The notes under the pieces are model-generated. The model saw only the letters and a program-made list of their open reading frames with translations. It was not told the origin of the DNA and did no database searches. A DNA stretch of 63,755 bases, filler included, from Olpidium bornovanus S191 (lineage: Eukaryota; Fungi; Olpidiomycota): assembly GCA_017911155.1 (NCBI GenBank). It is 28 parts of 28 records of this genome, joined end to end, with 100 filler letters (N's around TTAATTAATTAA, not from the genome) between each part and the next. Parts side by side here need not be neighbours in the genome. Positions count along the whole stretch, not along the records: positions 51,245 to 53,521 come from JAEFCI010004124.1; 27 more parts are not named here. One strand, 5' to 3'. Shown piece after piece: positions 51,655-53,322 of this stretch; position 1 is the first letter of the stretch, and every line of letters starts with the position of its first letter. A program made the translations under genes and the position numbers.

Positions 51655-53322
51655 ATGGGCCTGCGCTCGAACGTCCTCCTCGTGAGGCAGAGCCTGCTCT
51701 ACCTCCAGATCATCTGCCTGCTGCGCGTGCGGCGCTCCCTGCTGTCGCCCGCGGGCGGAGTGCCCGACGCCGCCCTCGGCGCCCTGCTCGGCATCCTGCG
51801 GGCGCTGAGGGCGGCCGCCGCCGCCTCGCTGGGCGGCGGGGCGGCCGCAGGCGTCCCGGCCCCGGACGCGGCGGCGGCGCTCCCGCTGGCGGCCGCCGCC
51901 GCGGCGAGCCGGGCGGCGGACCACGCGCGCGGCCTGGACGATCTCTCCGACAGCGAGGGCGGCTGCCCGCAGCTGGCGCGCCCCGTCGTCGAGCGGTTCC
52001 TCGAGCGCCGGTGCGCCGAGCTCGGCGCCTTCGTGGAGGAGCTCGCCCGCGCGCGCGAGGCCAACGCGGCCGCCTGCCGCGCCGTGCGGGCGCTCGCCGC
52101 CGAGTTCGCGGAGAGGGCGGCGGACTCCTGCTTCGCCGCCTCCGTCCGCCGGCACTTCCCGCCGGTTTCGACTTCGGCTCCGCCGTCCTCCCCGCCGTCG
52201 CCCGGCCAGCCGCGGAAGGCCAAGAGGCGGAGCAAAAGGAGAAGGACCGCCGCCGTCGACCGCAGAGACCCCCGCGCGCCGCAGGAAGTCGACCTTTTCG
52301 ACAAGCAGAAGATACTCGCCGGCGCCGACGAGCACTGCTCCGCGTTGGTCCGGAGGAGCCTCGAGCGGCGGCGGCAGTCCCGGCCGGCGGCGCCGGCGGC
52401 GGACTCCGGAAGGCGGCGCCGGCGGACGCTCTTTTCTTTCGGAACGACCGAGGCCGAGTGCGGCTGCACTTATCCTTTGTCGAGTTCCGAAACGACGGCG
52501 CCCGTCCAGGCGCGGAAAGCGGCGGCCGCCGCTGCCGCGCCGCCGGAGGACGCGCCTGAGGATCTGTCGCGATACCGGTCGAGCCTGGCGGAAACGACGG
52601 ACAAGTATTGGGCCCGGCAGGTGGAGGACAACGAGGCGGTTCTCTACTACGTCCTTGCCGTTGCCCTCTGGAAGGTTGGCTGGGTTGGTCGCGAGGAGGT
52701 CACGGCGGCGAGGAGCGCGATGCTGAGCCGAGCCGCAGGCGATGTTGAGACGGATGACGAGACGGCGCCTGGTGATGACGACGGGAGCGTCTCTTGGCGC
52801 GACTTGACGCCGGCCGAGTCGGGCCCGCCGCGGTCGGCTGCCGCGGCGGATCCCGCGCAGATATCGCCCGGCGGAGGCGGGTACGTCATCGATCACGGCA
52901 AGCCGGCGCCTGCCGAGCCGGAAGGCGCGGAGCATTGCGCAGTTTGCCGCGGCGCCGGCAACGCAGCCGCGGAAAGGAATCCTGAAGACGTCGCCCTGCG
53001 TGCCGTCAGGAGGCCGGGCGCCGCCGCACCCTGCCGTCACGATCGCGCGGCGGAGCACTCCACGCCGCTCCACGCCCCGCAGCTGACGCCTCCGCCTCGC
53101 GCGATGTCCCCGGCCTCCGTCAGCCCCTCGGCCTCTCCGCCGTCATTCGGCGTCGACGGAGGCAAGAAGACCAGGTACCGGTCGAACCATCCCCCCTGGG
53201 TCGGGAGCTACCTCAAAAGGTGGCTGTTCAAGCACGTCGACGACCCGCATCCGTCCACCGCCGAGAAGGACCGTCTAGCGAAGAGAACCGGATTGACCAG
53301 ACCGCAGATTTCGGACTGGATG
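51655..53322 (+). CDS. TALE-class homeodomain transcription factor with a KNOX2/MEINOX-like N-terminal helix, 3' partial
   Basis: Homeodomain RSNHPPWVGSYLKRWLFKHVDDPHPSTAEKDRLAKRTGLTRPQISDWM (three-residue loop, PHP), followed by a GTGCGT donor at 53323. N-terminal helix ERFLERRCAELGAFVEELAR. Confidence 0.88.

What the first reader, a model, noticed from the sequence alone, without database searches (positions are those of the whole stretch)
51655..53322. Fungal TALE homeoprotein carrying a KNOX2/MEINOX-like helix
Seen: ERFLERRCAELGAFVEELAR (51991-52050) aligns residue for residue with the plant KNOX2 core DQFMEAYCDMLVKYREELTR (F-x-E-x2-C-x2-L-x4-EEL-x-R). The N-terminal VRQSLLYLQIICLL loosely recalls KNOX1/MEIS-A (HPLYPxLL), and a TALE homeodomain lies about 390 codons downstream. 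Established: MEINOX domains mediate KNOX/BELL and MEIS/PBX heterodimerisation, and typical Dikarya TALE proteins (HD1, Cup9) lack them. Inference: this early-diverging fungus may keep an ancestral MEINOX-TALE system, possibly for zygote or resting-spore development.
Basis: partly seen in the sequence, partly recalled or inferred. Interest (0 to 1): 0.72.

Follow-up and report, generated by a model that had tools for sequence, protein, structure and literature searches.

The report
Olpidium TALE homeobox gene, doubtful MEINOX helix
This is an expressed, spliced TALE homeobox transcription-factor gene of the root parasite Olpidium bornovanus; its KNOX2-like helix is really there but cannot be shown to be a MEINOX domain, whereas a second, small TALE gene of the same genome does carry a convincing MEIS-like N-terminal domain, which had not been reported for fungi.

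Summary
The piece is the whole 2277-bp contig JAEFCI010004124.1 of the binned Olpidium bornovanus assembly. The ORF 51655-53322 is coding: third-position GC is 0.95-0.98 in the N-terminal part. It ends in a TALE homeodomain (Pfam Homeobox_KN, 1.5e-10) cut after residue 49 by a GTGCGT intron. RNA-type contigs from two studies span 52023-53322 and continue NARRRILPKA, so the gene is transcribed and spliced.

It scores 37 against the quoted KNOX2 20-mer. No shuffle (0/20000) and no natural control (0/302) reached that; bona fide protist MEIS-B helices score 26-41. Pfam, HMMER, hhalign (P 0.31-0.79), Smith-Waterman, BLASTP and language-model features find nothing significant in the N-terminal 470 residues.

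By homeodomain and shared 49/50 intron the gene belongs to a small clade with a second Olpidium gene (P0052) and six environmental proteins. Their N-termini carry HPLFP(V/L)L plus a long helix. That domain matches MEIS N-termini (hhalign P 4.5e-4, top fold hit a Meis cluster, top feature hits KNOX, MEIS, PBC).

Verdict: observation confirmed.

The parts
51245..51400 (.). GA-rich microsatellite-like upstream region (promoter or 5' UTR)
   Evidence: Read directly. GC skew is +0.8. An exact 175-nt contig of run X2 covers 51363-51537.
51532..51534 (+). In-frame upstream stop (TGA); no ATG, GTG or TTG lies between it and 51655
51655..53322 (+). Coding exon, 556 codons from the start ATG to homeodomain residue 49
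   Evidence: ORF. GC3 periodicity. 98-100% identical to NCBI protein BJ554DRAFT_6707. RNA-type contigs are gapless over 52023-53322.
51655..51759 (+). N-terminal predicted helix (residues 3-30) plus SPAGGVP. It sits where relatives have HPLFP(V/L)L...FEPGRVP, but the HP..P residues are not kept.
   Evidence: AF2 helix H3-30, pLDDT 59-71 over residues 1-30. MAFFT, the PSSM and Smith-Waterman all choose this register, but p is only 0.05-0.11.
51967..52155 (+). Predicted long helix, residues 105-167
   Evidence: AF2 single-sequence model, pLDDT about 77. It parallels the 53-residue helix 47-99 of P0052.
51991..52050 (+).
   Evidence: score 37. hhalign places 111-141 on the MEIS-B columns but with P 0.31-0.55.
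52213..52245 (+). Basic cluster RKAKRRSKRRR (residues 187-197), a likely nuclear localisation signal
   Evidence: Sequence only; the function is an inference.
52348..52377 (+). 30-nt 'intron' of the NCBI gene model, not supported
   Evidence: P0001 lacks VRRSLERRRQ. RNA-type contigs X1 record 7 and X2 record 13 cross the place without a gap.
53167..53322 (+). TALE homeodomain, positions 1-49, with the three-residue loop extension V-D-D before PHPS
   Evidence: Pfam Homeobox_KN. 81% identical over 53 columns to P0002. Alignment.
53323..53521 (+). Start of a phase-0 intron at homeodomain position 49/50 (donor GTGCGT, T-rich), cut by the contig end
   Evidence: RNA-type contigs leave the genome here and continue AATGCGCGCCGTAGG... 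= NARRR. A soil DNA contig (X7) keeps the intron. The same intron position occurs in P0052 and P0013.

Best explanation
The locus is the first, large exon of an expressed TALE-class homeobox transcription-factor gene of Olpidium bornovanus. The homeodomain (loop extension, W48, and V50-N51-R53 supplied by the next exon) binds DNA.

By homeodomain sequence and a shared phase-0 intron at position 49/50, the gene belongs to a small, previously undescribed TALE clade. The other seven known members start with a MEIS-like bipartite helical domain: HPLFP(V/L)L, then a long helix. In this gene about 390 residues of Ala/Arg/Pro-rich sequence, shaped by extreme GC pressure, separate the N-terminus from the homeodomain. 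The N-terminal 170 residues are predicted to form the same order of helices, with one extra Ala-rich helix.

I read this region as the strongly degenerated descendant of the clade's MEIS-like dimerisation domain. The KNOX2-like helix lies inside the long helix. It probably still serves protein-protein pairing, for example with the small paralog P0052.

Shown: gene, frame, homeodomain, splicing, expression, clade membership, and the MEIS-likeness of the relatives. Inferred: homology of this particular helix to MEIS-B/KNOX2, the dimerisation, and any role in zygote or resting-spore development.
For: Identity and coding. Homeodomain. Expression and splicing: (contigs of two studies cover 52023-53322 and continue NARRRILPKA).

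Clade: an exhaustive phmmer search puts P0002, P0008, P0013 and P0014 on top. In the FastTree the eight proteins form one group (SH-like 83; 90 without P0052), and the nearest is P0002 at 81%. The 49/50 intron is shared with P0052 and P0013.

MEIS-likeness of the relatives' N-terminal domain: hhalign P 0.0026 and 4.5e-4 with HPLFP aligned on HPLFP, and 0/300 column shuffles reach the score. The AF2 model has pLDDT 83, and the top atlas hit is a Meis cluster (TM 0.50 over residues 1-141), followed by BELL POX and KNOX1 clusters. With the homeodomain left out, the top feature hits are KNOX1/KNOX2, Meis_PKNOX_N and PBC.

For this protein: the 20-mer scores 37, as high as bona fide protist MEIS-B helices (26-41), and no shuffle or natural control reaches it. 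The best ungapped window against the MEIS-B block is residue 110 (p 0.013-0.039). The best window against the relatives' first block is residue 11 (p 0.05-0.11), so the two are colinear. hhalign and MAFFT pick the same registers. The helix order H3-30, H38-59, (H69-98), H105-167 parallels P0052's H7-22, H30-41, H47-99.
Against: No statistically significant similarity of the N-terminal 200 or 470 residues to anything:
- Pfam gave no hit at E<=10.
- PDB sequences gave nothing relevant.
- hhalign gave P 0.55, 0.45, 0.31 and 0.79.
- HMMER scored no better than shuffles.
- Smith-Waterman against all seven relatives was at chance.
- BLASTP gave nothing at E<=100.
- Language-model features gave no usable hit.

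The signature residues H-P-x-F-P are replaced by S-L-L-Y-L. The helix does not align in register with the second helix of its own clade: the best window is residue 101, p 0.09-0.25. It fits a plant or protist motif better than its nearest kin, which argues for coincidence in an Ala/Arg/Glu/Leu-rich amphipathic helix. The AF2 model of this region has low confidence (pLDDT 61). The 5' GC-rich part (51655-52022), which holds most of the helix, is covered only by fragments in RNA-type contigs.
Confidence: 0.5

Rival explanations
1. The gene is a genuine TALE homeobox gene, but its N-terminal region is no longer, or never was, a MEINOX-type domain. On this view the 20-residue match is a coincidence inside a compositionally biased (Ala 19%, Arg 11%), GC-driven amphipathic helix or disordered region, and the protein works through its homeodomain and other partners.
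For: All profile, pairwise and embedding tests are negative. The helix is out of register with the clade's own second helix. The HP..P signature is missing. A Karlin-Altschul estimate for raw score 37 in a 20 x 557 search space gives E of about 0.01 (my calculation).
Against: The score of 37 was not reached in 116,644 residues of natural control sequence. The match sits in the register that bona fide MEIS-B helices use. All seven other clade members have the domain at the N-terminus. The best alignments are colinear and lie at the extreme N-terminus, as in the relatives.
Confidence: 0.4
2. The contig is not from Olpidium or any fungus, but from another eukaryote washed off the cucumber roots (an amoeba or other protist) and mis-binned. 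The MEIS-like TALE genes would then be ordinary for their true lineage.
For: The assembly is a metagenome bin made by tetranucleotide composition from non-axenic zoospore washes (PMC7865070). The contig is only 2.3 kb. The six relatives other than P0052 come from unnamed metagenome or Logan contigs. MEIS/KNOX homology is known from Amoebozoa, Apusozoa and Holozoa (PMC6219170).
Against: The authors filtered the bin conservatively and by similarity. Two separate contigs of the bin carry clade members of like composition, GC 0.68 and 0.62. The holders are small runs under one organism label with many RNA runs, plus a soil metagenome, which fits a root parasite. The relative's intron in L004 is 76 nt with GTACGT and ACTAAC, a fungal-looking signature. 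The homeodomain clade is separate from the protist MEIS clade.
Confidence: 0.1

Closest known systems
Animal and protist MEIS/PKNOX (Pfam Meis_PKNOX_N + Homeobox_KN)
   Same: Both have a TALE homeodomain with the three-residue loop extension. The relatives of this gene, including the paralog P0052, share the N-terminal HPLFPLL motif and a following long helix (hhalign P 4.5e-4; the top fold hit is a Meis cluster). The helix 113-132 of this protein matches protist MEIS-B in 9 of 20 positions, for example EEFLIMYCEVLRICRSELER of P0180.
   Different: This protein gives no Pfam or profile hit. HP..P is lost. The N-terminal region lies 390 residues from the homeodomain. The intron is at homeodomain position 49/50, not 48(2/3). 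Position 50 is V rather than I, and position 49 is M rather than F.
Plant and algal KNOX (KNOX1 + KNOX2 + ELK + homeodomain)
   Same: The quoted KNOX2 core shares F, E, C, L, EEL and R with the helix. KNOX1/KNOX2 is the top language-model hit for the paralog's N-terminus (0.79, a lead only).
   Different: There is no ELK domain and no KNOX1 or KNOX2 Pfam hit.
Dikarya and Mucoromycota TALE proteins (Cup9/Tos8-like; for example the Absidia cylindrospora protein P0270)
   Same: They are fungal TALE homeodomain proteins that Pfam annotates with Homeobox_KN only.
   Different: They form separate homeodomain clades. Their N-termini (RVFSPVILYHD) only loosely resemble HPLFP (hhalign P 0.24). Joo et al. 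2018 report no MEIS/KNOX or PBC homology in Fungi.

Membership tests
TALE superclass homeodomain | Three extra residues between helix 1 and helix 2, and a Homeobox_KN profile match | tested here: met
   WLFKH-VDD-PHPS. Pfam PF05920 scores 41.2 bits against a cut-off of 24, E 1.5e-10. Alignment.
TALE superclass homeodomain | Helix 3 with W48, N51 and R53 | tested here: met
   W48 is in the window. N51-A-R53-R-R is read in the loose end of spliced RNA-type contigs (AATGCGCGCCGTAGG). F49 is replaced by M.
MEINOX (MEIS/PKNOX/KNOX) | Pfam Meis_PKNOX_N, KNOX1 or KNOX2 match on this protein | tested here: not met
   No family at E<=10 for residues 1-160, 1-200 or the whole protein.
MEINOX (MEIS/PKNOX/KNOX) | Profile-profile similarity of this N-terminus to bona fide MEIS N-terminal domains | tested here: not met
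   hhalign P 0.55 (37 sequences), 0.31 (15 protist sequences) and 0.79 (16 animal and protist sequences). HMMER gave no score. The same test is met by the relatives' family (P 4.5e-4).
MEINOX (MEIS/PKNOX/KNOX) | MEIS-A/KNOX1 signature HP(L/Y)(F/Y)P.LL | tested here: not met
   The aligned segment reads SLLYLQIICLL. The signature is present in P0052, P0013, P0155 and P0002; P0156 (HPLYHVL) and P0008 (HSLFPVL) each differ from it at one proline position.
MEINOX (MEIS/PKNOX/KNOX) | MEIS-B/KNOX2 amphipathic helix (F..(Y)C..L.....EL.R......FC..Y) | tested here: inconclusive
   The 20-mer scores 37, unreached by shuffles and natural controls. The ungapped MEIS-B PSSM has its best window at residue 110, p 0.013-0.039. 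Gapped and profile methods are not significant.
MEINOX (MEIS/PKNOX/KNOX) | Homeodomain intron at 48(2/3), reported for the KNOX/MEIS group (PMC6219170) | tested here: not met
   The intron is at 49/50, phase 0.
MEINOX (MEIS/PKNOX/KNOX) | Heterodimerises with a second TALE through the N-terminal domain | not testable with these tools
   The complex prediction with the P0052 N-terminus returned no verdict. This needs an experiment.
PBC / BELL partner classes | PBC (PF03792) or POX (PF07526) domain | tested here: not met
   No Pfam hit at E<=10.

The most novel reading that the evidence does not exclude
Olpidium, the zoosporic sister of the terrestrial fungi, retains a working MEINOX-type TALE pair. 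One member is a small MEIS-like protein (P0052). The other is this long, GC-eroded paralog, whose helix 105-167 is still a MEIS-B/KNOX2-type pairing helix. The two heterodimerise to switch on a diploid or resting-spore programme, as KNOX/BELL and MEIS/PBC do elsewhere. If so, the MEINOX dimerisation system was lost within Fungi only after Olpidium branched off.
Probability: 0.2. Interest if true: 0.75.

Novelty: new member of a known kind. Interest (0 to 1): 0.45.

Why it matters
TALE heterodimers (KNOX/BELL, MEIS/PBC) control the haploid-to-diploid switch or body patterning in plants, algae and animals. The N-terminal pairing domains have been traced to Amoebozoa, Apusozoa, Ichthyosporea and Excavata, but explicitly not to Fungi (Joo et al. 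2018, PMC6219170).

The evidence here points to a small TALE clade in Olpidium, and in unnamed environmental relatives, with a MEIS-like N-terminal domain. That would narrow the point at which fungi lost, or remodelled, this system. It would also give a concrete pair of genes to test in an organism whose sexual cycle is poorly known.

For the gene of the finding itself the pay-off is smaller. It is an annotated hypothetical TALE protein whose N-terminus may be a relic of that domain.

Tried and rejected
- Pfam on N-terminal pieces of this protein and of four relatives gave no hits.
- phmmer against PDB sequences gave only a bacterial HTH regulator at E 0.15.
- ESM-atlas features for residues 1-200 gave no usable hit.
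- The exhaustive phmmer search of 1.84 billion representatives placed every best match in the homeodomain. The multi-stretch hits were proteins with tandem homeodomains, not N-terminal kin.
- An HMM of the relatives' N-termini against this protein gave no score under E 10 and did no better than shuffles.
- Smith-Waterman against each relative was at chance.
- BLASTP against a protist MEIS N-terminus found nothing.
- hhalign against three different MEIS alignments was not significant.
- Complex prediction of residues 1-170 with P0052 1-105 gave no verdict (score 0.01, controls not run). I do not count it for or against binding.
- Foldseek against PDB with the P0052 model matched only homeodomains; it returned no match to the N-terminal domain, so there was no solved structure to compare that domain with.
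- A JGI metagenome scan for further clade members found none.
- A 'careful' homeodomain tree exceeded the sandbox limits, so a FastTree was used instead.
- The sandbox was lost, so a PSSM test with protist-only, P0116-type and animal-only MEIS-B blocks against natural controls was not completed.
- I considered the 626-aa ORF on the minus strand and rejected it. Its codon position 1 would carry the 0.97 GC, the wrong periodicity.

Full report
**What the piece is.** The 2277 bases given (51245-53521) are the complete contig JAEFCI010004124.1 of the Olpidium bornovanus assembly GCA_017911155.1. The word search returned one protein, the partial NCBI model 'hypothetical protein BJ554DRAFT_6707' (P0001). 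The look-up placed it on a 2277-bp contig. That assembly is a metagenome bin made from zoospores washed off cucumber roots (PMC7865070). The species label is therefore likely but not certain.

**Checking the observation.** The ORF from ATG 51655 runs without a stop past 53322. An in-frame TGA lies at 51532 and no other start codon lies in between. The region has 70-86% GC, and a 626-codon ORF also stands on the other strand, so ORF length alone proves nothing. Codon-position GC settles the question. On the minus strand that peak would fall on codon position 1.

Pfam finds Homeobox_KN at residues 523-557 (E 1.5e-10). The loop extension reads WLFKH-VDD-PHPS.

**The homeodomain, the intron and expression.** The homeodomain is cut after W48-M49 (53322) by GTGCGT, followed by T-rich sequence to the contig end. 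I laid Logan contigs of four runs on the piece. Record 7 of X1 and record 13 of X2 cover 52073-53325 and 52023-53325 without gaps. They then run on for about 290 and 334 letters that are unlike the window.

A contig of X4 shows the continuation AATGCGCGCCGTAGGATTCTCCCGAAAGCT, which reads NARRRILPKA. The three letters GTG fit both the intron start and the next exon. So the junction is M49 | V50, a phase-0 intron at 49/50. A soil-metagenome DNA contig (X7) keeps the intron sequence.

The gene is therefore transcribed and spliced in runs of two studies, and the mature homeodomain is complete. The same contigs cross 52348-52377 without a gap, so the 30-nt intron in the NCBI model is not supported. 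The extremely GC-rich 5' part (51655-52022) is covered only by fragments, such as an exact 174-nt contig over 51585-51760. The RNA data therefore do not show that most of the helix is in the mature transcript.

None of 20000 shuffles of the protein reached this (maximum 36). I scanned 302 natural TALE proteins without a MEINOX domain, forward and reversed (116,644 residues). The maximum was 32.

Bona fide Meis_PKNOX_N proteins gathered score 26-41 (protist type, for example EEFLIMYCEVLRICRSELER) or 8-15 (animal MEIS) in the same register. So the helix looks as KNOX2-like as real protist MEIS-B helices do.

Three points weaken this. The reference 20-mer comes from memory and was chosen after seeing the sequence. 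Shuffling destroys the heptad pattern of any amphipathic helix. A Karlin-Altschul estimate for this score and search space is about E 0.01 (my calculation).

**Profile, pairwise and embedding tests on this protein.** All are negative.
- Pfam gives nothing at E<=10 for residues 1-160, 1-200 or the whole protein.
- PDB sequences give nothing relevant.
- An exhaustive phmmer search of 1.84 billion representatives finds 302 proteins, every best stretch lying in the homeodomain.
- The N-terminal 470 residues score no better than E 0.34 against those 149 proteins.
- hhalign against 37 bona fide MEIS N-termini picks residues 111-141 on the MEIS-B columns, the expected register, but with P 0.55. Against 15 protist sequences it picks 111-120 with P 0.31. 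Against 16 animal and P0116-type sequences it picks another register with P 0.79.
- HMMER with --max does no better than shuffles.
- BLASTP against P0180 finds nothing.
- The language-model feature search gives no usable hit.
- An ungapped PSSM of the 42-column MEIS-B block has its best window at residue 110, with p 0.013 (residues 1-200) to 0.039 (residues 1-470) by shuffling.

**The relatives change the picture.** The nearest homeodomains are P0002 (Logan run SRR31163101, 330 aa, 81% over 53 columns), P0008, P0013 and P0014 (ENA metagenome assemblies), and P0155 and P0156. Next comes P0052, which NCBI lists as 'homeobox KN domain-containing protein [Olpidium bornovanus]' on contig JAEFCI010009900.1.

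In a FastTree of 67 homeodomains, these eight including the query are one side of a branch (SH-like 83; 90 without P0052). With 53 columns this support is modest.

Three of the genes could be read as DNA, and all have the same phase-0 intron at 49/50. The query has it. P0052 reads SEWF|gt..ag|VNARRR. P0013 reads DWF|GTACGT..ACTAAC..CAG|VNARRRILP, a 76-nt intron. This differs from the 44/45 and 48(2/3) positions that Joo et al. describe as ancestral.

**The relatives' N-termini are MEIS-like.** All seven relatives begin with a conserved domain: HPLFP(V/L)L..L...R..LSFEPGR, a short helix, then a long helix D..IR.AL..LI..I..L. Pfam does not recognise it.

Profile-profile comparison with bona fide MEIS N-termini aligns HPLFP on HPLFP. 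The P value is 0.0026 (score 24.8). A greedy alignment is colinear through MEIS-B. None of 300 column-shuffled controls reached the score (mean 11.4, maximum 19.6). With a cleaner MEIS alignment the P value is 4.5e-4.

AlphaFold2 on the seven-sequence alignment gives pLDDT 83 with helices 7-22, 30-41 and 47-99. The nearest ESM-atlas fold is a 'Meis homeobox 1' cluster (TM 0.50 over residues 1-141), followed by BELL POX (0.44) and KNOX1 (0.43) clusters.

With the homeodomain left out, the three best named clusters by language-model features are KNOX1/KNOX2 (0.79), Meis_PKNOX_N (0.77) and PBC (0.76). Each score is only a lead. Three TALE pairing domains in a row are still hard to get by chance.

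I conclude, at about 0.7-0.75, that this clade, including one Olpidium gene, carries a MEINOX-type domain. Joo et al. 2018 looked for such homology in Amorphea and found it 'not from Fungi'. I found no later paper reporting it.

**Does the query still have that domain?** By descent it should, because all other clade members have it at the extreme N-terminus. The query is likewise encoded by one exon from the start codon to the homeodomain intron.

MAFFT, the ungapped PSSM and Smith-Waterman with P0002 and P0013 all put residues 11-39 (RQSLLYLQIICLLRVRRSLLSPAGGVP) on HPLFPVLVQLHEWREVLAFEPGRVP. But the scores are at or near chance (p 0.05-0.11, and Smith-Waterman not significant), and the H-P..P residues are gone.

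The single-sequence AF2 model is weak (pLDDT 61). It predicts helices 3-30, 38-59, 69-98 and a 63-residue helix 105-167 at pLDDT about 77. That is the order seen in P0052, plus one Ala-rich insert.

A relic should resemble its nearest kin at least as much as it resembles a plant motif.

I put the chance that residues 1-60 descend from the clade's first motif at roughly 0.7-0.8. I put the chance that helix 113-132 is a true MEIS-B/KNOX2 homolog at about 0.4.

**Likely working.** Shown: a TALE homeodomain with W48, V50, N51 and R53, and an expressed, spliced mRNA.

Inferred: nuclear import through the basic cluster RKAKRRSKRRR (187-197), and pairing through the long N-terminal helix with itself or another TALE. 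P0052 is the obvious candidate partner. A complex prediction gave no verdict, so I do not count it. The two Olpidium genes share the 49/50 intron, so they look like a lineage-specific duplication rather than an ancient MEIS/PBC-type dyad. Any role in zygote or resting-spore development is speculation by analogy with KNOX/BELL.

**Verdict.** The specific claim, that this helix is a MEINOX/KNOX2 helix, fails every profile test and remains unproven. The wider claim, that this fungus keeps a MEINOX-type TALE, gains real support from the paralog P0052 and its environmental relatives. The gene itself is a new member of a known kind (TALE homeobox). The clade-level finding is the more interesting part and needs a proper ortholog survey.

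Noticed in passing
L002:2478-3154 (O. bornovanus contig JAEFCI010009900.1): A second TALE gene of the same assembly (P0052, 176 aa). It starts MEAHPLFPVLVQL, has a long helix, a complete homeodomain, and the same 49/50 intron. Its N-terminus is MEIS/KNOX/PBC-like by hhalign, predicted fold and language-model features. It is a candidate partner of the gene in the finding.
   Followed up: yes
window 52348-52377: The NCBI gene model removes a 30-nt GT..AG 'intron' (VRRSLERRRQ). 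RNA-type contigs of X1 and X2 cross it without a gap, so it is probably an annotation artefact.
   Followed up: yes
P0270 (Absidia cylindrospora), P0064, P0071, P0066, P0096, P0078; P0132: Mucoromycota-type TALE proteins start with R(V/I)F(S/N/C)P(V/L)(I/V)(L/V)(F/Y)HD, and an ascomycete-looking one starts with RAYFPLFLSLF. MAFFT places both on the HPLFPLL motif of MEIS. hhalign does not support this (P 0.24), so it is only a lead that a relic of MEIS-A may be widespread in fungal TALE proteins.
   Followed up: partly
P0003-P0010 (for example Chromosphaera perkinsii P0004-P0006; P0009): Proteins with three to nine tandem TALE homeodomains, in an ichthyosporean and in unnamed metagenome and Logan contigs. 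This is an unusual architecture for the TALE class.
   Followed up: no
window 52474; 52542-53521: All three RNA-type runs read T for C at 52474, which is a strain difference. A soil-metagenome run (X7) holds a relative of roughly 95% identity with the intron retained and small insertions near 53468-53472, so close kin of this organism occur in soil.
   Followed up: partly
window 51652/52384, 51812, 51996: A joint 51652->52384 with ten foreign letters appears in X1 and X2, and there are loose ends at 51812 and 51996. Most are probably cross-matches of GCC-repeat stretches with other transcripts, since records with 19-33-nt matches are listed. An alternative 5' structure is not excluded.
   Followed up: no
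window 51193-53073, minus strand: A 626-codon ORF lies antisense to the gene. It is a by-product of 70-86% GC, and its codon-position GC pattern is the wrong way round for a gene.
   Followed up: yes
L004:1627-1702: The relative P0013 has a 76-nt intron with a GTACGT donor, an ACTAAC branch site and a CAG acceptor at homeodomain position 49/50. This is a fungal-looking signature on an otherwise unnamed 8-kb metagenome contig (ERZ27258666).
   Followed up: partly
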